From Podarcis erhardii (taxonomy: Eukaryota): a DNA stretch of 64,000 nucleotides. The stretch lies in assembly GCA_964252035.1 (NCBI GenBank), contig OZ176216.1; one strand, 5' to 3'. Under the pieces are notes generated by a model. The model was given only the letters and a program-made list of their open reading frames with translations. It had not been told where the DNA came from and did no database searches. The stretch's first letter is position 1. Each line of letters opens with the position of its first letter. Below are positions 5,346 to 18,865 of this stretch, one piece after another. Both the position numbers and the translations under genes were made by a program.

Positions 5346-5989
5346 TACTAGCCTTATGTCTTTGTTCCGCCTCGGAATGCCAGTTGCTGGGAAACACCCA
5401 CCGGGAGAAGGCGAAGACTGTGGTGCGCAGGTCCTGCTTTGAGGCTTGCCATTAGGCACTAGCTTGGCCACAAGATGCTGGACGAGTTGTGTCTTTGGCC
5501 TGATCCCCAGACTCTAACATTACTTAGTAGGAGCTGGCCAACCACCTGTTGGGTCTGCTCTAGGTTTGGATGTTCTGCCCTCAGCCGGAGGTTTGGCTGT
5601 ATGGTTTCCATGGCCACCCACCCAACAAGTATGCCTCAAGTTACAGACATGGCTGTATGTACATAGCAATTCTTTATTATATTAGCCTTCTTTCTAAGTT
5701 CTGAATCTCATCTATGTCATTTAAATTTCTCTGCCCAGTTTCCAGAGTCCTGAAATCACAAGTCTGCTCATTCTTGTCCAAACAAGACTTGAAGAGAGGT
5801 GACAGATTATGCTTCTTTGTTTTTAAGTCGGCATTCTGTAGAATTGAGGGGAAGCCCAGTCTAGCCATTCCAATGAATATGGGAATCAAGACCCACAAAT
5901 CGGGCCTGCTTGTTGGAGCAGAAGTGTCCCTGCCACCGCTGGGCCTCTTCCCCCAGCGCCAAGAGCGGGTCTCCGCCTTCCCTAGGGGA

Positions 5990-6660
5990 AGAGTTTTGCG
6001 CGCGCGCCGGGGCACCTGGAGGCCTCACAGGGGGACCCCGTTCCCCAAGGCAGCGCCCGGCCTCCTGGGCTGGAGGGAACTGGAGCGCCGCCGCCCGACC
6101 CGTCCAGGCGGGAAACTGCAACTCCCAGCATGCCCGGCGCCTGGCGCAGCGCGGGCAGCCAATGAGGCGCCGCTTTCTTCCGGCGCTGCCTCTGAGGGAG
6201 CTTTGTGCTGCGCGAGAAGAAAGGCGGCGGCGGCGGCGGCGAAGGCGAAGGCGAAGGCGGCGGGCAGGGCCGAGGCCGGGGCCTGAGAGCGAGCGAGCGA
6301 GCGAGCGAGAGCGGAGCGCCAGCGCCCCCTCTCTTCCCCGGACTCCTCGCCCGCAGCCCCCGAGGAGGCTCCTGCGCCGCCCGCGACGGAGGAGAAGGAG
6401 GCAGAGGCAGAGGCAGAGGAGGCGGCGGCGGCGGCGGCGGGAGCGCCGCGTCAATTGAGGCCGGGGATCGAGCGCGGCCTACGGCGGGGCCTGGCCCGCC
6501 CCCTTTGCCCAGCCCGGCCCGGCGAGGCCCTTTCCGCCGCGCCTCCTCCGTTACGCGTCCCGGCGGCGATCGGTCCGATACGGCGGGGAAGTTAGAATGG
6601 AACAGACTGACGGTGAGGCGCCACGGGGGGGGGGGCAGGGGGCGGAGACGTCGCCTTGCG
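5990..6660 (+). promoter_or_regulatory. NSD3: CpG-island promoter of NSD3
   Basis: Very GC- and CpG-rich in an AT-rich background. E2F-like GGCGGGAAA at 6107-6115, ZNF143/SBS-like ACTGCAACTCCCAGCATGCCC at 6115-6135, CCAAT at 6159-6163, ETS-like CTTCCGG at about 6177-6183. No TATA box seen. Confidence 0.85.
6200..6612 (+). other. NSD3: NSD3 exon 1 (5'UTR; start approximate)
   Basis: Lies in the CpG island and ends at the donor GACG|GTGAGG (6613), followed by G-runs. Joins to the exon-2 acceptor at 18144. The TSS cannot be fixed from sequence. Confidence 0.7.
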
Positions 6661-6799
6661 AACGAGCCTCCCCAAGTTGCTGGTCCTCAGCATTCCTCCG
6701 TGTCCAATATTTACCTTTTGGAGAGCCCTAGGGCCCTCCATTTTTCCTTTCGTTTTTCATCTACAGGACCCTTGATGAAAACGAGGCTTCTCATGGTAG

Positions 6800-6930
6800 A
6801 ACGGTAGAGTGGGAAGGGGCGCGAGGGTCATCTAGTCCAACCCGCCTCAATGCAGGAATCTTTTACCCGATGCGGGGCTCAAACCCACGACCCCGAGAGC
6901 CGGAGTCATCCCCACCTGGTCTTCCTCCTT
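6800..6930 (-). mobile_element. tRNA-derived SINE with CR1-like tail (Squam3-like)
   Basis: Approximate reverse complement of the SINE at 35155-35290, with a CR1-type tail (GGGTCATCTAGTCCAACCC...TGCAGGAATC). Confidence 0.55.
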
Positions 6931-7166
6931 TGCTCCTGCATGGGTGACCTCCCTCCCTTTGGTATTGGCTTGGACAGACATATTTATGTAGCAGTTTGGG
7001 GACCTAAGGAGAGATGAGGTGGGAACCCAGCGCAGGAAGCAAAAGCTTTCCCTTCCCAGTTTCCAAGAAGCAAACCTTACTTGGCACAGACAAGCACAAG
7101 TGGGCATTTTCAAGGTCCCCCCCCCCAGTGCTTTAGGGTATATCTGTAATCCAAAGTAGCCCTCAG

Positions 7167-7383
7167 TACAGTGGTACTTCAGGTTACAGACACTTGAGGT
7201 TACAGACTCCACTCACCCAGAAGTCATACTTCAGGTTAAGACCTTTGCTTCAGGATGAGAACAGAAATCACGCGCATCAGCGGCGGCAGCGGGAGGCCCC
7301 ATTAGCTAAAGTGGTGCTTCAGGTTAAGAACAGTTTCAGGACCTCCAGAACAAATTAAGTTCTTAACCTGAGGTACCACTGTA
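7167..7383. mobile_element. Tc1/mariner-type MITE, family A (orientation B)
   Basis: TA-flanked TIRs CAGTGGTACTTCAGGTTA...TAACCTGAGGTACCACTG. Reverse orientation relative to the 8468 copy. Confidence 0.85.
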
Positions 7384-7975
7384 ATCTGAACTTGGTGTGC
7401 ATTAGGATCAGTGGTTTCAAATCATCATTCAGCTGTTAAACTCACTTTGTGACCTTAGGCCATTCAATATTTTTCAGCCTAACACTATGTGTGCTGCCCT
7501 GAATTCTTTGGAGAAAGGGCAGTATAAAATCATGACAAATAACCTGTAGCTATTATTATATCAGAATTTGATCTGAGAGACAGTGGGTTGCTGAAGACCA
7601 CATAATGAGTTCATGGCAAAGTGAGATTTAAAGTACTGTATGTAAGTTTCCAAATTTGGACCTAATAGTCCCTTAGCTCTTGGAGTGAGCCCCATTGAGC
7701 TTAGTGGGCCTTTTGAGGAGATACGTATACAGTAGTAGTGAATTGGTTAATATACCACCAGTTGAGGGAGAGCTCTAAAGAGTCAGGGGGTCATTAGATG
7801 TGGAAGTAAGGACTTTTCATAGTGGATTTGGCTCTGAGTATTTGTGTGTTTGGTAGACATTTAGCAGTAGCAGCACCAAGAACTTGAAGCGAAAGTACAC
7901 CAACAAAGTATCAAAACATCAAACACTTTATTAAAATACATAAAAACTATTCCACAGCAGCTTAATCCCTGACAG

Positions 7976-8187
7976 TACAGTGGTACCTCGGTTTACCAAC
8001 TTAATCCGTTCCAGAAGGCTGTTCTTAAACCGAAACTGTTCTTAAACTGAGGTGCACTTTCCCTAATGAGGTTCCGTTCTTAGACTGAGGTAAAGTTCGC
8101 AAACCAGGACACTACTTTCAATTTTGCGGAGTTCGTAGACTGAATTGTTTGTAAACAGGGCTGTTCTTAAACCGAGGTGCCACTGTA
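7976..8187. mobile_element. Tc1/mariner-type MITE, related family
   Basis: TA-flanked TIRs CAGTGGTACCTCGGTTTA...TAAACCGAGGTGCCACTG. Confidence 0.85.
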
Positions 8188-8467
8188 TGTGGTAGATAGT
8201 GCAGAGGGGAGGTATGGGCAGCATATATATTCTTGGGGGAATGGGGGTTTGGGGAGACCTAGGAATGTGAGGATGTATGGGTGCTATAGGACTCTGAAAC
8301 AGATGGAGTGGAAGTGGGATGATCTCACATAGAGCAATGGGATTGTGAGGATGCCAGAATTGGGACGAAGGCTGGAGGCGGGTTGAGGCATTATGATTAT
8401 ACACCTTTAGGTTCCAGACAAAAATGTTCCTCTTCAATCAGTCCTTTGACTGATTAACATCTTACAG

Positions 8468-8686
8468 TACATTGGTACCTCAGGTTAAGTACTTAATTCG
8501 TTCCGGAGGTCCGTACTTAACCTGAAACTGTTATTAACCTGAAGCACCATGTTAGCTAATGGGGCCTCCTGCTGCTGCCACGCGATTTCTGTTCTCATCC
8601 TGAAGCAAAATTCTTAACCCAAGGTAATATTTCTGGGTTAGCCAAGTCTGTAACCTGAAGCGTATGTAACCCGAGGTACCACTGTA
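8468..8686. mobile_element. Tc1/mariner-type MITE, family A (orientation A)
   Basis: TA-flanked TIRs with the internal GCTAATGGGGCCTCC and GTTCTCATCCTGAAGCAAA shared with the other copies. Confidence 0.85.
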
Positions 8687-11600
8687 TATGCCTTTTAAAT
8701 TTGTTTGTGGGAGGTGGGGTTATGGTTGTTTTTATCATGTATTTTGTACTTCATCTGAGATCTGCAGATGAAGGGAGATGTACAAATTTAATAAATAAAA
8801 TAAAATGGGATTGATGATTTGGTGATAAATAATAGTCAGCTGGTATGCAAGGAGGTTATAGTCCTATAACCTCAACTATAGTCCTATAGTTGTGGTTGAT
8901 GTTGTGAACATGACAATGGAAACACAGTTGCTGAGGCATTTTAGGTGGTTTGGAGTGTTAGACTCTTCAAGACTGTTGGCTTAAAGGATATGAGAAACAA
9001 TATAGGAAAATACATTATGAAATAATTTATACACAAAGTGTTGCTATGGGTTGTGTGTTGTGACCAGTACAATAATAGAATAACTGTGCTGGAGTCTGGC
9101 GAGATGGCCTTAATGTAGTGTCATATATAAGTGTGAGAATATGGACTGTGGATGTGGAATTGGTTATGTCGCTTGCCATGGGGTTGCTGTTTTGCATGAC
9201 ATTCTAACTAGAAAGCCATAAATAGTCATGGGGTAGTGTTGGAATTGGCCTTGGAGTTGGAGAAGTCTAATCTGGGACTGTTAATAACACAACCTTTTGT
9301 GTATGTATATACAGTGCCTGCCTACACGTATAAATTTGCATGAATGCCCTATTAAGGCTTGAACCTAGAGTTCTAGAAAGTGATCTCTTGTTGCTAAAGG
9401 GAGAGGCACCCTCTTTGTTTTTCAAAGAAGGGTTGAGGAATAATTGAGGATAGATCAGATAATAGTTTAATGTGATGGAGTAGGGCCATTTGGATTTAAA
9501 GGGGCAGAGGCAGCCATGTTTGCTTCCATATACTGCAGTGTAAATCTCTTTAGACCCCCTACTCCCCAAAAGAAACAAGACTTGCTTTGGGTTATCAAAT
9601 GATCTTTAAGATCCTTCTCCTTGTTCCTTATTCTCTATCTTAAAATCATACCATTCTGAAATTTATCATAAGCAGGCTGAGAAAGGAACATCTTTCCTCC
9701 TTCTCATTCCTTTCTGCAGCCAGTACTGCTAGGGGACTGTGGTGCAGAAATTAACCCTTTTCAATACAAATCTGCAGCGGGATTACACAGACATTTTTCT
9801 CTCCATTTTCATGAAGAATTAAATAGGTAGAGGGGCTGTCTCTGTTGTAAATGGCAGAAGGCTGAACCATCTTCAGCAATTTCTTTAAGTAAACAAGGAA
9901 ATGACATTGCCAAGGCTGTCGACAAAAGGCACACTTGTTTGTGAACAGCAAAATGAAACTTACTTACTGATTGTGTTTTAAATATTATACACAAAGGGAT
10001 TTCCTCCTACATTTTTCTTAATGCTTTTTCTTGACTCTATTCCTGTACAGATAGCTAAGTGTTCCTTTATTTTAACTGCCATTCAACTGTGCAGATGCTG
10101 TTGTTTGTATTTCATGTACAGCAGACAACAGAGATGTGAGACAAATTGCTGTTCAGGTATCTGATTAGTGGGAAGCAGGTATATTTGTGTGATGCTTTGA
10201 TAATTTTTTTTGAATTGATAGCATCCGAGGGTTTTTTCTGCAGTGGAGAGAGGCTCCATATTCTGATTGTATCTCTAATGTTTGTAGTTTGTTCATTTTG
10301 TTTTTCTTTGTTGATTGGACGGAAGTATAAATGTGAATGTCTTGTCAATCAGCCACAATCTTTGCATGTTTGGATAAATCCTGTGTCGGTTTGTTTTAAA
10401 ATCAAAGTATCATATTTTGATATGCTTGCTTCATTTTTACACATCTGCTTCTCAGTGTTCCTGTTTTTGCCCTTAAAAACCCTAATACTCTGGGGGCAAG
10501 ATATAATTTATTACTATGATTGGCTGCAATGCTGCAGCAGTTATATGCAGAATAACAATATTTCATTAACATTTTCATAACTGCACCGTGTTCTGTGTAA
10601 CACTAGGCAATGTCTGCCACTCTAGTGCTGTTCTTTCTTGTTACTATTTTCTCTAAGCAAGTCTTAGTAAAAGATGATCAGTGGATGACACCAGGTGCTA
10701 TTGAATCGGTTAAAGTAGTAATGTTTGGCTCCAGTAGAGAGGACAAGTACGTTGGCAAAGGGGAAGTTTGTAACAAAATGCTTTCTAGGAATAATTATTT
10801 TTCACTTTAAATTGATTACTTTTTTACTTCAGTGCTATGTGTATGTAAAGTTGGAAATGACTCATAACATTTTGTATGATGGCTAGGTGGATGAACTGCT
10901 TTGCTCTTCATAAAACTGTTTAGACTATGCTTTCTATAATATAAATATACAAAACAACCAGAGTGTTGGCAATTTATGTGGGAATGAGAAACCCCAGACC
11001 CATGAGATGATGCCTTTGTTGGACCAGCTAGGCTTTAAAATACTCGAACTGAGCTTATTTTGAAAACCTACTTGATCTAGTGAAAATAGCATCCTGTGTT
11101 TCTTGTTACATAAAGAAGGCAAATTTTTTATTTTATTTTGCAAATGGAAGATTTTGTATACTTGAAAGACTATATACATACATATAAAAATGGTAGGCAG
11201 CATGAAGGCCTTGATTTTCTTCTCTGTATGGCTGCTTGTATGCAAGTTTGATAGTGTTAGACAGCTGACACCTTAGCCCAGACACACCTCTTTTGAAAGA
11301 GTGTGTCATTGATTTACTATTGAAGCCTACTAATGGAATCCTAACCATGTCTACTCAGAATTAAGTTCTGTGGAATTCATTGGGGTTAAGATTGCAGATT
11401 ATGTTGTCCAGTCTGCTCCTCTGGTGGTAGTGTTGCTAATTATTGTAGTGTATATATAATTATTTGTATATAATTTAGTAGCTGCTCTCTCTCATACTCT
11501 TAACAAGATGTGGAAAAAAGTCTGTAATATGATACCATAAAAACAGAATGCCACAAAAGCCATAAACAGCAGTGTCATAATCAGAGTAAAATAAATAAGC

Positions 11601-12301
11601 TGACCAGTACCCAGGCAGTGTTTCATCTGCTGATGGAAAGTGTGCAGGGAGGTTGCCGTGTTGAACTCTCTAGTTCAGAGAGTAGGACAAACACAGAAAA
11701 GCTTCACTGTCTCAGATCCAGGGGTCCACTTCAGCCTTATAGTTCTGCCTGTCTGGTCCTTTTCTTTTCAGGCCACACCCCTTCTCAAGCTCACATTTCT
11801 CACTGGCCCTGCTCCACACCTCCCCTTCTAGATGCAGTGTGTCACTGAACTGTAATAATGCCTTTTGCTTGCCTGGATGGAGGCACGCACATGTAGAAAT
11901 AGCTTGACTTCTGAATGACTGGGCTGTAGCTTCCAGTACAAAGCTACATGTCATGTCCCTTGGGCTACCCACCACTGCCATGTGACCCCCAGAAGGTTGC
12001 AGTGCCTCTACTCAGAACAGTGCACATGATCAAATTTAAGCAATTCTAAATTCCCATTTATTTTTATTGTCGGACAGCTAAGCACTTGCTGGGACTTAAA
12101 AGTGCTTAATGGGCTGAATAATGCCATATGATAGATAACCTACAAGTTAAGCCTGGGCTTACTTTTGAGGTTAAACTTAACCTTTTGTGTGTGTGTAGAA
12201 TTGCAATTGAGTAGCATTGTGTTTATCAGATTGGGAAAAATACTACTCTAATAATGAATTACATCATTTGTGTACATTCTAGAAAAATGCAGAATTGTAA
12301 T

Positions 12302-12527
12302 TACAGTCGTACCTTGATTGTTGAATGGAATCCATTCCAGAAATCCGTTTGACTGCTGAAAACCTTTGACAACCAAGGTGCGGTTTCCCATTGGCTGCAG
12401 GAGTTTCCTGCACTCAGTCGGCTTCCAAAGAATGGTTGCAAACTGGAAAATTCACTTCCGGGTTTGCGGCATTCGGGAGCCAAAAAGTTCAAGTTGCAAG
12501 GCATTCGGGATCCAAAGTACAACTGTA
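12302..12527. mobile_element. Tc1/mariner-type MITE (diverged family)
   Basis: TA-flanked imperfect TIRs CAGTCGTACCTTG...CAAAGTACAACTG. Confidence 0.7.
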
Positions 12528-12931
12528 TTGATGAAGGAGGATGTAAAGCTTTGTGCTGACTTTCTGATATTCTGTTTCTCTCAGTCTAACCGTGTCTCAT
12601 TACTAATGAAAGGGTTATGTTCCATCAGTGAAATGCTGGCTATTTGCCTACCATCACAAAATGGGATGCTGGAGTTAATGCAATATAATGGTGTTGCAGG
12701 GGGTCAGACTCTTTGTCCTAGTTTGACCATTTGTTGACTCTGCTTTTTGCAGCCTGTTCCTTGGGTATTGCATCATGTTCTTTTTCAGGAACATTAAATA
12801 TAAAATGTAACATTTTTATGTTTGCTGCCTTGAAAGGAAGAGTGGGATACAAATTAATAAATACCAAAATGTAAAAATGTGCTTAAAGTTTTCATGTTGG
12901 TTATAGTTGTCACGAAGTTTGCTTATTGCTA

Positions 12932-13182
12932 TACAGTCATACCTCGGGTTGAATGTGCTTCGGGATGAGTGCGTTCGAGTTGCGCTCCGCGGCAACCCGG
13001 AAGTAACAGAGCGTGTTACTTCCGGGTTTTGCTGCATGCACAGATGCTCAAAATGACGTCATGCGCAGAAGCGATGAAAACCAATGTGCGCATGCGCAGA
13101 CGTGCCATCACTGGTTACATTTGCTTCTAGATGCAAACGGGGCTCCGGAATGGATCCCGTTCGCATCTAGAGGTACCACTGT
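12932..13182. mobile_element. Tc1/mariner-type MITE (CpG-rich family)
   Basis: TACAGTCATACCTC...GAGGTACCACTGT termini, with an internal hairpin AACCCGGAAGTAAC...GTTACTTCCGGGTT. Confidence 0.7.
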
Positions 13183-14675
13183 CTTTTGTAATAATGTTTA
13201 TTTAATTACTTCAGAGCATTAATATCTTGCTTTTCAGGTGATTTCTGAGTTGCTAATGCAGCTGAAATACTAAAAAAGTAATAGATACAGAAAATGCATC
13301 CTATAACAGTAGCAGAACGATGATCAATAAGCCATATTTAAAAATTTCATAAAACCCAACATCTAAAAGGCCTGGGTGAATAAAAACTCTCCATCCAGCA
13401 CCAAAGGCATTGAGCTCTGTGACAGATGAGCCATCTCTTCTCACCTCTTGGGGACCTGAAGGAGGGCTTCTGGAGAGGATTCTGTGTGTATGATCCACCC
13501 ACTCCTAACATCCCAAATGAACTTTGGTAAAATTACTTGTTCGTGGAATTTTGCTTTTAGCTGAGTGTTTATCAATGCAACTGCACTGCATTGTAATGTA
13601 TTCTGCATAAAGCAAAAATAAAAATAAATGATTAGTTGTCGGAGCAAGGAAGTGTGTTACTCTGGAAGCCAGGCATATCAGGAAATGCTCAGCTACCCTG
13701 ATTGCAATATGTAGTTCTTTTCCTTCCCTTGTAGCAAAACCCATCACATTTCTAAAAAGTAATTTTAATATACACCAGAGATCACTTTAACATTTAGGAC
13801 CAGCACAGTGTGGTGTTAAAGTATTTCACATCTCAACCTGCAGAAAGTATCCTGGAAAGAGAACTCTTTGAATGCTGGAGGATGACTTTTAAGGGTGGAC
13901 AAACAGGCCAGGATGTTGAGTGTCGGCTGTAGATTGTGATAAAAAGTTCCCTCCTCTCTTCCTTTGTTCTACGAACAGGGCTGTCAGGGCGATAGCAGTA
14001 CAACTCCCCCTCTGCTGCTGCTCTGCCAAAACTGCTTTTGCAGAGGAAAACCAAGCTGTCAGCAGCTGTGGCTTCTCCTTTCTAAGCACAGCAGCTCCTT
14101 TCCCTCCTCCAACTTTTCTCTATTGTAGAGCAGTTTTGAAAATGGGGGAGGCATTATTTCTCTCTTTGACTCTTAAATGGTGCCAATTATGTATGCTAGG
14201 ATTCTCAGGGACATGGAATTGAATAACCCAGTTCCTTACATTCCATTCTTAAAGGTTTGCTCTTTACTAGGATTTAAATCAAGAATTGAAGCCATTTCCA
14301 AGACTATAAATGACAGTAAAACCAACAAAAGCATGAACTCCTGTGGCCTGATCTTCAAACCAGGGATCTGTCTTAAGAATCTTGAGCTGCTTCTTCCTTC
14401 CTTTTAGTATTTATGTCACCCTTACAACCAGGTTCCCAGAATGACTTTCATTTTAGTTGTAGATGTAATTTGCCATAGCTGTTGCTCTCTGTTTTGAGCA
14501 ATTTTCCCATTTTTAAAAAGTTGTGTGTGTGTGAGAGAGAGAGTGCATCTGTGTTTTTTCATTCTGTACTTTCCCTGATCCCAACTGTGCTGGATTTATA
14601 TTTTTGAATTTGTGTCATTAGTAAATGGAATACTGTATGTTAAATTGCAAGATGATGGAAGAGAAAGAATGTTCA

Positions 14676-14905
14676 TACTGTGGTACCTCAGGTTAAGTAC
14701 TTAATACGTTCCGGAGGTCCGTACTTAACCTGAAATTGTTCTTAACCTGAAGCACCACTTTAGCTAATGGGGCCTCCTGCTGCTGCCTCGCCGCCGGAGC
14801 ATGATTTCTGTTCTCATCCTGAAGCAAAGTTCTTAACCTGAAGCACTATTTCTGGGTTAGCGGAGTCTGTAACCTGAAGCATATGTAACCTGAGGTACCA
14901 CTGTA
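14676..14905. mobile_element. Tc1/mariner-type MITE, family A (orientation A)
   Basis: TA-flanked TIRs. Near-identical body to the 8468, 26865 and 48373 copies. Confidence 0.85.
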
Positions 14906-15762
14906 CTGTAGACCAGATTTCAAGAAAGTGAAGTCAAGTTTACTAAATTTGCCACTTTAAAAACTTATATCCCATTAGAAATGTTTTGTACTTAGCAAAA
15001 TAGCAAAGTAATTGTTTGTTTATTCAAACATATAAAACAGGCATTGCTGATCAAACATGAAGTTATAAGCTGTGTGCATAGTTGCATTTTGGGGTTCATT
15101 TTCTCAACTGTCATAATAAGTCTGAGTGCAAAACGTTTAGGACTTGGTATATTGTTGAATTCAGAACACCAGTTAGGAAGGAAGCATTGGGATGGTGGAT
15201 ATATTGTGTGTATTAAAAATGTTTTTTGTGGGGAGAGGAGGGAGAGCCATTATGCTTATTCTGTGCTGTATGTCCCATTGGCCTGGGATCAGCAATACAG
15301 TACTGTAAAAGCTTATTCTTGGTTCTGGAGTGTAGAGTGCTAATGCAAGCTGGTTGTTGATACGGAGGGCCAAATTTGCCAGCAAGTAGTTCAGCTGAAC
15401 AGTTTGTTCATAAAACCATCACAATGTGTGTCAAATTTAAAGGAGTGTTCTTCAAAATAACCTAGATTTCTTTTGCTATCTTCATCTGCATGCCGCCTGA
15501 GGAGGTCTTTAAACGTTTTCTGTACGTAGTCGTTCAAAAGATACCACCTTCCTAGCCTGGATTCTTACTAGGGAGAGAGCAAGACTGAGCCTCGGGCTTG
15601 TGCTCCCTATCGAGTGCGCCTGTTTTTCTCACTGCAGGAGACATGGCTGCCTGAACAAAAAGGTCCTGTGGTTATTGCAATGTAGAATCTTCCCTGATTC
15701 CAGGCAGATAAGCACTCTTTAACAGTGCTTGGTCTCCCAGAATAAGGAAGATGTAAAAAGGT

Positions 15763-15982
15763 AAAGGGTAAAGAGACCCCTGACCTTTAGGTCCAGTCGT
15801 GGCCGACTCTGGGGTTGTGGCGCTCATCTCGCTTTATTGGCTGAGGGAGCCGGCGTACAGCTTCCGGGCCATGTGGCCAGCATGACTAAGCTGCTTCTGG
15901 CGAACCAGAGCAGTGCACGGAAACGCCGTTTACCTTCCCGCCGGAGCAGTACCTATTTATCTACTTGCACTTTGACGTACAT
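15763..15982 (-). mobile_element. Sauria SINE, 5'-truncated
   Basis: Starts with the reverse-complement tail GGTAAAGGGTAAAGAGACCCCTGACC and continues with the typical Sauria SINE body. Confidence 0.8.
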
Positions 15983-16126
15983 TCAGATAATTAAGACCTC
16001 CTAAGTTAGATGTTCTGCTCTCTCCCCATTGAGAATAGAAAGGGAGGGAGTGCATGAGCTGTCAGCATGCTTCTGTTCTCTCCCTTGTGTACAGTCCAAA
16101 ATGGGATATAAGTAACGTTTGAATAA

Positions 16127-16485
16127 GGGACGCGGGTGGCGCTGTGGTCTAAACCACTGAGCCTAGGGCTTGCCGATCGGAAGGTCAGCGGTTCGAATTT
16201 CCATGACGGGGTGAGCTCCTGTTCTCAGTCCCAGCTCCTGTCCTCCTAGCAGTTTGAAAGCATCTCAAAGTCAAGTAGATAAATAGGTACCGCTCCGGCG
16301 GGAAAGTAAACGGCATTTCCGTGCGCTTCTGTGGTTCGCCAGAAGTGGCTTAGTTATACTGGACACATGACCCGGAAAAACTCTGCGGACAAACTCCCTC
16401 GTCGGCTCCCTCGGCCAGAGCACTGCAACCCCAGAGTTGTTTGCAACTGGACTTAACTGTCAGGGGTCCTTTACCGTTTTAACTT
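16127..16485 (+). mobile_element. Sauria SINE, near full length
   Basis: tRNA-related head GGGACGCGGGTGGCGCTGTGGTCTAAACC with a B-box-like GGTTCGAATT, a typical body and a ...GGGGTCCTTTACC tail. Confidence 0.85.
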
Positions 16486-16845
16486 TTGAATAGGCCCTAG
16501 GATGTTTTTGCTGTGAGATGCCTCCACTTAATTTACCTTTATTATATATGCATGAATAGCAAGATTATGTTTTTACTTCCATATCAGTGATATTGTAAAA
16601 TAATTTGCTGCTTCCTTGTCATGGCCACCACACAAATGGAGTTGCTCACATCAGTATGTAAGAAAACTCAGTTTTTGGAAGAACATGTAGCATGTATATA
16701 CTAATGTAGTCGTTCTTGTCTAATAGATACATTTTTTATGCAAGATAATCCCAAAAGATAAAAACTGGGGTATACAGGACAATGTATAGGTAGATAACTT
16801 TTGACTAAAAAATTAGTTCAGCCAGTGCCCTTAGCTCCACAGAGT

Positions 16846-17063
16846 TACAGTGGTACCTCAGGTAACAAACACTTTGGGTTACAAATGCTTCAGGTTACAG
16901 ACTCCGCTAACCCAGAAATAGTACCTCGGGTTAAGAACTTTACTTCAGGATGAGAACAGAAATCATGCGGCGTCAGCCGCAGACCCCATTAGCTAAAGTG
17001 GTACCTTAGGTTAAGAGTGGACCTCTGGAACGAATTAAGTTCTTAACCAGAGGGTCCACTGTA
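16846..17063. mobile_element. Tc1/mariner-type MITE, family A (orientation B)
   Basis: TA-flanked TIRs. Reverse orientation relative to the 14676 and 26865 copies. Confidence 0.85.
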
Positions 17064-17944
17064 GTCATATTGTTCATGGTGCTTTTGGCACCTTTAATGG
17101 CTTAGAGATTTTTAATATATTTTACACAAATAGGGCTGGGTGAGATCTGGTTTTCAACATCTTGATATATTACCAGCTAACCATCACAATATACCAATAT
17201 ATCATGATGTCTGGAATAAGGAGGAAGGAGGAAATAAGGTGGGGAAGAAGAAGCAACCAAGAGTTGATTCCTGGATATGGACTTCAAACTGGTTTTGGAC
17301 GATACATCACCCAGTCCTTGTGTTGTAATCTGGTCTCTGCATATCGGCCATGCAAGAGTCAGGCAGCTACATGGCACGATTCTCCACTTCCGTTGCACAT
17401 AAGGAGGGAGTGGGCAGGAGGAGTGACCAGGAGGAAGGAGGCAGCCCACTTGCTAGGATACAAGCAGGCGGGCGCCGGGCGGGAAATTTCTCGAGCTCCC
17501 TCTGCCAGGAAGTGAGTGGGAATTCATGATATATTTCCAGGTCAAAAATTCTGAAACCATTATTGTGATCTGGACTTCTAATCGGTTTTGGATGATGTTT
17601 CAACATGTCTCCCAGGCCTCCACACATGGGTACAGACGAGGGAAAATAAGCAGTGAGGGGAAAGGCTGTGAAATGCAAGAGATTCTAGACATGCATTTTC
17701 CCCCCTTCTGTGTGTGGTGTGTGTAGAACGCAACCATCATGGCTATGTATTACCTCTGTTATTGGAGGCAGTATGTCTCTGAATGCCAGTGGCTGGGAAT
17801 CACAAGTGGAGAAAGTGCTGTTTGCTTGCAGGCTTCTCACAGGCATCTGACCTGCCACTGTGAGAACATGATGTTGGACTAGAGGAGTCCAGAAGCACTC
17901 TTCTTAGGATCTTATATATACTTTTCTAACTGAAGGTAGCACTT

Positions 17945-18008
17945 CATGCATCAGATGAAGTGCACACTAAAGCTTATGCCATAAAACATCTGTTAGCCTT
18001 TGAAGTGC
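17945..18008 (+). mobile_element. Decayed Penelope-type pLTR fragment
   Basis: CATCAGATGAAGTGCACACTAAAGCTTATGCC...TGTTAGCCTTTGAAGTGCC resembles the pLTR/hammerhead segment of the two younger copies, but the core is mutated. Confidence 0.45.
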
Positions 18009-18187
18009 CCTAAGACTCATTGTGTTAGCATGGAGGGAAATTCTCACCCAGCCCACTTCCAAGCATTTGTCTTGGCTTCTTAAACTTTACTAAAGAACTT
18101 GCACCACCAACTGCTTTATCTTTTCACTTGTTTCTTTTTTTAGGCCCTATGAGAAAAAGGGAAAGCTAAGGATGCTGGAGCAGAACA

Positions 18188-18865
18188 ATGGATTTCTCCT
18201 TCTCTTTCATGCAAGGGATCATGGGAAACACAATTCAGCAACCACCTCAACTCATTGACTCGGCTAACAACCGCCAAGAGGATGCTTTTGATGCCAGCAG
18301 TGACATCACTGAAGATGGTAGTCAGACGCCATATGAAGCTGCTCTTGCCTTGCAGCAAGGTTTTCAGTACCCTACGCCAACAACGGAGGATCTTCCACCC
18401 CTCATTAATGGATTTCCACCAATTGGCATGTATGAACCCCAAGCCAAATATCAGCCATATAGTCAGTATCCTAATGGTTCAGCCAATGGCTTTGGCACTG
18501 TTAGAAACTTTAGTCCACCAGAGTATTACCACATGGAGAACTCTAGCATAAGGCCACATGAAAATCTGGAAAAACCATCTCCTCCACAGCAGCCACCTCC
18601 TTCAGTATCCCAAACGGTGATTCCAAAGAAGACTGGTTCACCAGAAATCAAATTAAAAATAACCAAAACTATCCAGAACGGCAGGGAATTGTTTGAGTCC
18701 TCTCTGTGTGGGGATCTTTTAAATGAAGTACAAGGAAGTGAGTATGCGAAGTCAAAACATGAAGGGAGAAAAGAGAAAAGGAAAAAAAGTAGCAAGCATG
18801 ACTCTTCCCACTCAGAAGAGCGCAAATCACATAAAATTCCAAAACTGGAGCCAGAGGAACAAAAT
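18188..18865 (+). CDS. NSD3: NSD3 exon 2 (first coding exon; exon starts at 18144), 226 codons
   Basis: [27 protein letters not shown]...[31 protein letters not shown]...[11 protein letters not shown] matches the vertebrate NSD3 N-terminus. Acceptor TTTTTTAG (18143), donor GTAAGT (18866), phase 0. Confidence 0.97.

What the first reader, a model, noticed from the sequence alone, without database searches (positions are those of the whole stretch)
6597..18258. Two-uORF cassette at the NSD3 start: a spliced uORF across exons 1-2 plus an out-of-frame uORF overlapping the CDS
Seen: the only ATG in exon 1 downstream of the CCAAT box is at 6597, in strong Kozak context (AGAATGG). Joining 6612 to 18144 gives ATG GAA CAG ACT GAC G|GC CCT ATG AGA AAA AGG GAA AGC TAA (MEQTDGPMRKRES-stop), which ends 18 nt before the main ATG (18188) and is in the same frame. 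Two nt after that stop, an ATG at 18172 opens an out-of-frame 28-codon ORF ([28 protein letters not shown]) overlapping the CDS to 18258. Established: a short uORF followed by an overlapping inhibitory uORF is the ATF4 delayed-reinitiation layout. Inference: NSD3 dose may be translationally gated. The spacers here are far shorter than in ATF4, so simple repression or stop read-through giving an N-terminally extended protein are alternatives. The spliced uORF is invisible to the unspliced ORF track. I recall the human leader being similar but have not checked.
Basis: partly seen in the sequence, partly recalled or inferred. Interest (0 to 1): 0.7.

Follow-up and report, generated by a model that had tools for sequence, protein, structure and literature searches.

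The report
Ancient upstream-ORF module at NSD3 start

Summary
Every coordinate, frame and Kozak context is as stated. Spliced mRNA contigs of a related squamate carry exactly the predicted exon 1-exon 2 junction, the same 13-codon uORF and only three upstream AUGs in a leader of about 410 nt. RNA reads of a close relative cover 6450-6612 in sense and stop at about 6612.

The cassette is deeply conserved.
- The 44-nt exon-2 leader has no indel in 10 taxa.
- It is identical in squamates, another sauropsid and a bird, although about half of the 4-fold sites of the same exon differ (P down to 1e-15).
- The in-frame stop and the out-of-frame AUG 2 nt after it are present in all taxa, two teleosts included.
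- uAUG1 lies 16 nt before the donor in every taxon where exon 1 was seen.
- Synonymous sites of NSD3 codons 2-18, under the overlapping ORF, are almost frozen (P=2e-7).

The ATF4 reading fails on spacing (2 nt and 16 nt). Read-through is disfavoured by tandem stops in one lineage. The best reading is a constitutive translational attenuator packed into one ribosome footprint. A C/EBP-like choice of start site remains open.

No paper on it was found. The scan has noted conserved uORFs in other genes of this genome, but not this one. This is a new member of a known kind.

The parts
6159..6163 (+). CCAAT box of the NSD3 promoter, inside a CpG island (about 5950-6700)
   Evidence: A homologous CCAAT is seen in L003.
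6195..6612 (+). Exon 1, all 5' leader. The 5' end is only a proxy, taken from where the related squamate mRNA contigs begin.
   Evidence: Alignment A2. RNA reads cover 6450-6612 in NSD3 sense. 6213-6450 was masked by the reads tool.
6597..6612 (+). uAUG1 in strong context (A at -3, G at +4) and the exon-1 part of uORF1: five codons plus the first base of the split Gly codon
   Evidence: The same ATG 16 nt before a gtgag donor is found in L003 and in bird L010. It is also in the mRNAs L017, L018, L013 and L019.
6613..18143 (+). Intron 1 (11.5 kb, gt...ag), with SINE copies
   Evidence: Its 3' end cannot be aligned between taxa.
18144..18169 (+). Exon-2 part of uORF1, with the inner weak-context uAUG2 at 18149 and the stop TAA at 18167-18169
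18172..18258 (+). Overlapping out-of-frame uORF of 28 codons. uAUG3 has A at -3 and C at +4. The ORF covers NSD3 codons 1-23.
   Evidence: The ATG is present 16 nt before the main ATG in all 11 sequences.
18167..18241 (+). Most constrained block, from the uORF1 stop through uAUG3 and the main AUG to NSD3 codon 18. The first 25 nt are identical from a teleost (L015) to amniotes.
18188..18865 (+). NSD3 coding part of exon 2 (226 codons). The main AUG is in strong context. In-frame Met8 is at 18209. Met12 at 18221 is in strong context.
   Evidence: (source names give NSD3).

Best explanation
This lizard's NSD3 mRNA has a GC-rich leader of about 420 nt. Its last 60 nt hold a vertebrate-conserved start-site module.

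Anatomy, as shown here:
- uAUG1 is in strong context 16 nt before the end of exon 1. It opens a 13-codon uORF that crosses the splice junction and stops 18 nt before the NSD3 AUG.
- Two nt after that stop, uAUG3 opens an out-of-frame ORF that runs over NSD3 codons 1-23.
- The stop, uAUG3 and the main AUG lie within 24 nt, which is about one ribosome footprint.

Mechanism, as inferred:
- Most scanning 43S complexes start at uAUG1 and terminate too close to the NSD3 AUG to reinitiate there efficiently.
- Complexes that leak past uAUG1 are partly captured by uAUG3 and carried past the NSD3 AUG.
- NSD3 is therefore made only by the minority that leak past all the uAUGs or reinitiate at short range.
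- The module acts as a constitutive brake on NSD3 dose. It would respond to start-codon stringency rather than to eIF2-alpha phosphorylation.
For: - The module is in the mature mRNA.
- The 44-nt exon-2 leader has no indel in 10 taxa. It shows 0 differences from the other sauropsid (L003) and the bird, where 49-53% of the 4-fold sites of the same exon differ (P 2e-13 to 3e-15). Mammals differ at 3-4 sites and teleosts at 5-13.
- Conservation begins exactly at the splice acceptor, so the constraint acts on the mRNA and not on the DNA.
- The stop is kept in all taxa, including a TAA-to-TGA change. uAUG3 and its context are kept in all taxa.
- uAUG1, its context and its 16-nt distance to the donor are kept in squamates, L003, the bird and L013/L019.
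- Replacements in the uORF1 frame are nearly all conservative, unlike in the other two frames.
- Synonymous sites of codons 2-18 are frozen: 3 of 15 vary, against 29 of 30 further on (P 1.9e-7).
- No stable RNA fold and no Rfam family explains the conservation.
Against: - No ribosome-profiling or reporter data were available, so translation of either uORF and its effect on NSD3 output are inferred.
- Exon 1 was not seen in mammals or teleosts, so uAUG1 is undocumented there.
- uAUG2 is lost in teleosts.
- The N-terminal residues of the overlapping ORF's peptide vary non-conservatively.
- The frozen synonymous sites could reflect an RNA-binding site or other constraints on the initiation region.
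- The purine-rich part of the leader could be a splicing enhancer.
- RNA read depth over exon 1 was only 2-4, and the junction partner was not displayed for this species.
Confidence: 0.6

Rival explanations
1. C/EBP-like choice of start site. Ribosomes that translate uORF1 end too near the main AUG, skip it, and reinitiate at the in-frame Met12 (or Met8), giving NSD3 without its first 11 (or 7) residues. Leaky scanners make the full-length protein.
For: uORF1 is 13 codons and ends 18 nt before the main AUG. That is the same logic as the CEBPA and CEBPB uORFs, which end 7 and 4 nt before the long-isoform start (PMC11109482). Met8 and Met12 are invariant in all 11 sequences, and Met12 has A at -3 and G at +4. 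The frozen synonymous sites span exactly codons 1-18.
Against: uAUG1 is in strong context, whereas the C/EBP uORF starts are suboptimal. Met12 lies only 51 nt after the uORF1 stop. No evidence for N-truncated NSD3 was available. Met8 and Met12 may be conserved simply as protein residues.
Confidence: 0.12
2. An RNA-level element unrelated to uORF translation: a purine-rich exonic splicing enhancer for the exon-2 acceptor, or a protein-binding or initiation-context element. On this reading the AUGs and the stop are passengers.
For: The leader is purine-rich. Conservation is at the nucleotide level and extends 54 nt into the CDS. The N-terminal residues of the overlapping ORF's peptide vary.
Against: - The stop is kept through a TAA-to-TGA change.
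- Length and frame are kept with no indel over 44 nt in 10 taxa.
- uAUG1 in another exon keeps its distance to the junction.
- Replacements are conservative only in the uORF1 frame.
- There is no significant fold (z +0.31) and no Rfam hit.
Confidence: 0.13
3. Peptide-dependent action. The uORF1 peptide stalls the ribosome at termination (arrest-peptide type), or the peptide of the overlapping ORF is a functional dual-coded micropeptide.
For: Changes in the uORF1 frame from teleosts to mammals are synonymous or conservative (BLOSUM62 +1 or +2, with one -1), which is not so in the other frames. The core of the overlapping ORF's peptide is invariant.
Against: There are few substitutions, and the stretch is purine-rich, so transitions alone yield K/R/E exchanges. 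The invariance of the overlapping peptide is largely forced by the invariant NSD3 N-terminus. There is no match to a known arrest peptide. The peptides are too short for the search tools.
Confidence: 0.08
4. ATF4/GCN4-type delayed reinitiation. Under eIF2-alpha phosphorylation, ribosomes that resume scanning after uORF1 skip the overlapping ORF and start at NSD3.
For: The layout resembles ATF4 in order: a short uORF followed by an out-of-frame uORF that overlaps the CDS (PMC11058473).
Against: There are 2 nt between the uORF1 stop and uAUG3, and 16 nt between uAUG3 and the main AUG. No difference in tRNA reloading time can separate the two starts.
Confidence: 0.04
5. Read-through of the uORF1 stop, giving NSD3 with a 20-residue N-terminal extension.
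For: uORF1 is in frame with NSD3 and separated from it by a single stop in most taxa.
Against: L013 and L019 have tandem TGA TGA. The linker codons are not conserved as protein. The UAA-G context is not a known read-through context (own knowledge). The shared frame follows from the conserved lengths.
Confidence: 0.02

Closest known systems
CEBPA / CEBPB regulatory uORF (Calkhoven model; summarised in PMC11109482)
   Same: A short uORF (6 or 12 codons there, 13 here) ends a few nt before the main start, so translating the uORF and starting at the main AUG exclude each other. In-frame AUGs lie downstream.
   Different: uAUG1 here is in strong, not suboptimal, context. The gap is 18 nt, not 4-7. 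A second, overlapping out-of-frame ORF starts in the gap. The uORF spans a splice junction. No truncated NSD3 isoform is documented.
ATF4 (also ATF5, GCN4) delayed-reinitiation leader (PMC11058473)
   Same: The order of elements: a short 5' uORF, then an out-of-frame uORF overlapping the CDS start.
   Different: The spacers are 2 nt and 16 nt. In ATF4 the first spacer is about 90 nt (own knowledge) and the distance to the main AUG is long. The timing mechanism cannot work here.
Generic conserved repressive uORFs and overlapping uORFs of vertebrate dosage-sensitive regulators (Johnstone, Bazzini and Giraldez 2016, from own knowledge)
   Same: uAUGs conserved beyond the neutral rate in the leader of a chromatin regulator. 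An overlapping ORF is the most repressive class.
   Different: The depth of conservation (teleost to amniote with no indel), the packing of the stop and two starts into one footprint, and frozen synonymous sites in the first 18 codons.
Closely spaced AUG pairs (Kozak 1995; Matsuda and Dreher 2006, from own knowledge)
   Same: uAUG3 and the main AUG are 16 nt apart, with the stronger context downstream. That spacing is one at which both starts can share scanning ribosomes.
   Different: Those cases lack an upstream uORF that terminates just before the pair.

Membership tests
ATF4/GCN4-type delayed reinitiation | Short 5' uORF that permits reinitiation | tested here: inconclusive
   uORF1 is short at 13 codons. 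Whether it permits reinitiation cannot be read from sequence.
ATF4/GCN4-type delayed reinitiation | Spacer of tens of nt between the uORF1 stop and the inhibitory uAUG, so that the ternary complex reloads under normal conditions | tested here: not met
   The spacer is 2 nt (18170-18171) in all taxa.
ATF4/GCN4-type delayed reinitiation | Inhibitory uORF overlaps the CDS out of frame | tested here: met
   18172-18258 overlaps the CDS from 18188. The frame offset is 16 nt.
ATF4/GCN4-type delayed reinitiation | Main AUG far enough beyond the inhibitory uAUG for late-reloading ribosomes to choose it | tested here: not met
   The distance is 16 nt.
ATF4/GCN4-type delayed reinitiation | Translation induced by eIF2-alpha phosphorylation | not testable with these tools
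   This needs reporters or polysome data under stress.
C/EBP-type uORF start-site switch | uORF ends too close to the main AUG for reinitiation there | tested here: inconclusive
   The gap is 18 nt here, against 4-7 nt in CEBPB and CEBPA. It is probably too short for efficient reinitiation, but this was not measured.
C/EBP-type uORF start-site switch | uORF start in suboptimal context, allowing leaky scanning | tested here: not met
   uAUG1 has A at -3 and G at +4 in all taxa seen.
C/EBP-type uORF start-site switch | A downstream in-frame AUG yields a truncated isoform | not testable with these tools
   Met8 and Met12 exist and are invariant, and Met12 is in strong context. Their use is unknown.
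Conserved repressive uORF / overlapping uORF | uAUGs lie within the mature mRNA leader | tested here: met
   Spliced contigs L017, L018, L013 and L019. Sense RNA reads over 6450-6612.
Conserved repressive uORF / overlapping uORF | uAUG, frame and stop conserved beyond the neutral rate | tested here: met
   (P 1e-3 to 1e-19 per pair).
Conserved repressive uORF / overlapping uORF | Ribosome initiation at the uAUGs and lower main-ORF output | not testable with these tools
   No Ribo-seq or reporter data were at hand.
Conserved-peptide uORF (arrest peptide) | Amino-acid sequence under purifying selection in the uORF frame | tested here: inconclusive
   Changes are conservative only in the uORF1 frame, but there are few substitutions and the composition is purine-rich.
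Programmed stop read-through extension | A single leaky stop and a conserved in-frame linker | tested here: not met
   Tandem TGA TGA in L013 and L019. The linker is not conserved as protein.

The most novel reading that the evidence does not exclude
The 24-nt stretch that holds the uORF1 stop, uAUG3 and the NSD3 AUG is a decision point the size of one ribosome. It apportions ribosomes between three outcomes: full-length NSD3, an N-terminally truncated NSD3 starting at the invariant strong-context Met12, and the overlapping ORF. On this reading, the frozen synonymous sites of codons 1-18 mark a dual-coded or regulatory segment kept for more than 400 million years.
Probability: 0.12. Interest if true: 0.75.

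Novelty: new member of a known kind. Interest (0 to 1): 0.52.

Why it matters
NSD3 is a dosage-sensitive histone methyltransferase and BRD4 adaptor, and a driver in the 8p11 amplicon (own knowledge). Its control is usually discussed at the level of gene copy number and transcription.

A start-site module kept without a single indel from teleosts to mammals would add a translational layer to that control. It gives precise, cheap targets for testing: three AUGs and one stop. It would also explain why the first 18 codons of NSD3 are frozen even at silent sites.

It is also a clear example that a uORF spanning an intron escapes ORF scans of unspliced DNA.

Tried and rejected
- **Junction reads in this species.** I laid exon 1 (5800-7299). 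The tool masked 6213-6450 as repeat, so it gave no TSS. SINE copies crowded the loose-end table, so the junction partner of the reads ending at 6612 was not shown.
- **Contigs withheld or left aside.** DNA for P0011 and P0037 was withheld. P0011 and P0038 look human to me, so I did not pursue them. No human sequence was compared.
- **Joined exon model.** The joined exon 1 + exon 2 model was sent to no tool. Its pieces were translated apart, and natural spliced contigs were used by reference instead.
- **Exon 1 in mammals and teleosts.** It was not found within the flanks fetched for the whale (10 kb), the rodent-like mammal or the two teleosts.
- **RNA structure.** There is no excess stability (z +0.31) and no Rfam family in the leader.
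- **Literature.** No paper pairs NSD3 or WHSC1L1 with uORF. Supplements of two sORF catalogue papers do not list NSD3, but the stored files may be cut. Three other papers have no supplements held.
- **LETM2 in the window.** A tblastn with the L003 upstream ORF gave nothing.
- **NSD1 and NSD2 leaders.** These could not be fetched.


Full report
**Observation**

- An ATG at 6597 stands in the context aga-ATG-g.
- Sixteen bases later the exon ends (6612) at a good donor, gtgagg.
- At 18143 a long T-run plus ag ends the intron, and exon 2 starts at 18144.

Translated apart, the pieces give MEQTD (6597-6611), a split Gly codon (6612 + 18144-18145), and PMRKRES-stop (18146-18169).
- The stop TAA (18167-18169) is followed by 18 nt and then the main ATG at 18188, in the same frame.
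- The ATG at 18172 opens a 28-codon out-of-frame ORF that ends at 18258.
- An inner in-frame ATG at 18149 is in weak context.
- A CCAAT box sits at 6159-6163 inside a CpG island. No ATG lies between it and 6597.
- From composition, about 2.3 ATGs would be expected in those 402 nt, so their absence is not remarkable in itself.
- Exon 2 ends at 18865.
- Its 226 codons are NSD3 by the names that sources give to homologues: Heterocephalus, Phyllostomus, Anolis, Chelydra and Sphenodon.
- A two-residue insertion shared with Anolis marks the window as squamate. Other notes of the scan call the genome a lizard.

**Is exon 1 real, and is it spliced as claimed?**

- In two stranded RNA runs of a very close relative, reads lie on 6450-6612 with the first mate on the minus strand. 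In most stranded libraries that means RNA in NSD3 sense.
- Depth is 2-4 there, falls to a value that fits 12-13 covered bases in the 6600-6649 bin, and is zero beyond it.
- The tool masked 6213-6450 as repeat, so no TSS could be read.
- SINE copies filled the loose-end table, so the junction partner was not shown.

The gap was closed with natural spliced contigs.
- L017 and L018 are two RNA-derived Logan contigs of a related squamate that encode the 609-residue short NSD3 isoform. They carry 409 and 418 nt of leader.
- Their exon 1-exon 2 junction is letter for letter the one predicted for the window. They have the same 13-codon uORF and exactly three upstream AUGs.
- Their 5' ends align to about window 6195, roughly 35 nt after the CCAAT box.

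Neither is supported.

**Conservation**

Genomic or mRNA contigs were fetched for ten further sequences (nine taxa besides the window, since L013 and L019 come from one lineage):
- two squamates;
- a non-squamate sauropsid (L003, with a weak LETM2_N call upstream on the other strand);
- a bird (L010);
- a whale (L009);
- a rodent-like mammal (L016);
- two mRNAs of a more distant vertebrate (L013 and L019, 66% protein identity);
- two teleosts (L014 and L015).

The exon-2 leader:
- The intron before exon 2 cannot be aligned between groups, yet from the first base of exon 2 the 44-nt leader has no indel in any taxon.
- It is identical in the squamates, L003 and the bird. It differs at 3-4 sites in mammals, 7 in L013/L019, and 5 and 13 in the teleosts.
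- 4-fold sites of codons 25 onward in the same exon differ at 15-75%. Taking that as the neutral rate gives pairwise binomial P values from 1e-3 (the closest squamate) to 1e-19, and 3e-15 for the bird.
- The in-frame stop is present in all taxa. In L013/L019 it has become TGA and is followed by a second TGA.
- uAUG3 sits 16 nt before the main AUG with A at -3 in all eleven sequences.
- From the stop to the main ATG-G, 25 nt are identical between teleost L015 and the amniotes.
- uAUG2 is kept in tetrapods but reads GTA or GTC in the teleosts.

Exon 1:
- uAUG1, its aga-ATG-g context and its 16-nt distance to a gtgag donor are seen in the window, L017/L018, L003, the bird, and the spliced L013/L019.
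- Exon 1 was not within reach in mammals and teleosts.

The uORF1 frame:
- Changes in the uORF1 frame are synonymous or conservative: M/V, R/K, K/E, E/D and S/T, plus one P/S.
- The same substitutions read in the other two frames give mixed or negative scores, and one of those frames holds a stop codon in most taxa.
- This is suggestive of selection on that frame. The substitutions are few and the stretch is purine-rich, so it is not decisive.

**A feature beyond the finding**

The constraint runs on into the CDS.
- Among codons whose amino acid is invariant and degenerate, only 3 of 15 show any synonymous change in codons 2-18. The figure is 29 of 30 in codons 25-226 (Fisher P 1.9e-7).
- This frozen stretch lies under the overlapping ORF.
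- It contains the invariant in-frame Met8 (weak context) and Met12 (atc-ATG-g, strong context).
- No RNA structure explains it: the fold of the natural mRNA segment is no more stable than shuffles (z +0.31). Rfam has nothing in the leader.

**Mechanism**

What is shown:
- The elements are in the mRNA.
- They are under strong purifying selection that starts at the exon boundary.
- The start and stop codons as such are what is kept.

What is inferred from the scanning model:
- uAUG1 in strong context should capture most 43S complexes.
- Termination 18 nt before the NSD3 AUG leaves too little distance for efficient reinitiation there, and none for uAUG3 at 2 nt.
- Leaky scanners meet uAUG3 in adequate context and then the stronger main AUG 16 nt later.
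- The stop, uAUG3 and the main AUG fit within one ribosome footprint, so termination and the two initiations exclude one another in space.
- The simplest outcome is a constitutive brake on NSD3 synthesis that responds to start-codon stringency.

I give the brake reading 0.6 overall. My confidence that the module is real and maintained by selection is about 0.85.

**Comparison with known systems**

- **ATF4.** The ATF4 leader has a 3-4-codon uORF1 and a 60-codon uORF2 overlapping the CDS (PMC11058473). It works because distances allow timed reloading of the ternary complex. Here the two critical distances are 2 and 16 nt, so two defining features are not met.
- **C/EBP.** This is the nearer analogue. 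In CEBPA a six-codon uORF ends seven nt before the long-isoform start. In CEBPB a 36-nt uORF ends four nt before it. Leaky scanners make the long form, and uORF translators reinitiate at an internal AUG (PMC11109482). NSD3 shares the near-start termination and has invariant downstream Mets. However, its uAUG1 is strong rather than weak, and no truncated isoform is known.
- **Read-through.** This is disfavoured by the tandem stops in L013/L019 and by the unconserved linker.

**Novelty**

- No paper in the held library pairs NSD3 or WHSC1L1 with uORF. The one paper that holds both NSD3 and 'upstream open reading' is about eEF1A methylation, with neither term in its title or abstract; I did not open it.
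- Two sORF catalogue supplements do not list NSD3, though the stored files may be cut.
- Large human Ribo-seq catalogues may still contain it.
- The scan itself has noted conserved uORFs in MSX1 and PPP2R2B of this genome, but not this one.
- I class it as a new member of a known kind, made notable by its depth of conservation, its compactness and the frozen silent sites.

**Limits and compliance**

- P0011 and P0038 look human to me, and DNA for P0011 and P0037 was withheld. I searched for no more of them and compared no human sequence.
- The joined exon model was left out of all tools.

Noticed in passing
window 18191-18241: Silent sites of NSD3 codons 2-18 are almost invariant from teleosts to mammals: 3 of 15 vary, against 29 of 30 further on. 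The stretch lies under the overlapping uORF and contains the invariant Met8 and Met12.
   Followed up: yes
window about 6447-6480 (exon 1): A block of about 30 nt in the 5' leader (GAAATCGAGGCCGGGG-like) is kept in the squamate mRNAs, L003 and the bird, about 130 nt before uAUG1. Its function is unknown.
   Followed up: partly
L017 carries about 1.5 kb after the stop. The candidate short isoform therefore looks like the conserved NSD3-short form.
   Followed up: partly
window 6800-6900 and 7150-7299: SINE copies in intron 1 draw very deep, multi-copy RNA read and contig depth in all four runs. They swamped the tables of the reads tool.
   Followed up: no
window 6600-6649: One short contig of run X1 (labelled only as guessed RNA) covers the bin across the exon 1 donor. 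It is unspliced pre-mRNA or DNA in that run.
   Followed up: no
L003:1-662 (minus strand): A gene call with a weak LETM2_N hit lies about 2.5 kb upstream of NSD3 exon 1 on the opposite strand, which suggests a LETM2-NSD3 head-to-head arrangement. A tblastn of that ORF against the window found nothing.
   Followed up: partly
L001:2214-2981: One squamate has lost one Pro codon (3 nt) inside the overlap. This keeps both reading frames and shortens the overlapping ORF to 27 codons.
   Followed up: no
L013, L014, L015, L019 (exon 2): Teleosts and the distant vertebrate carry long His/Pro-rich insertions in exon 2 that amniotes lack.
   Followed up: no
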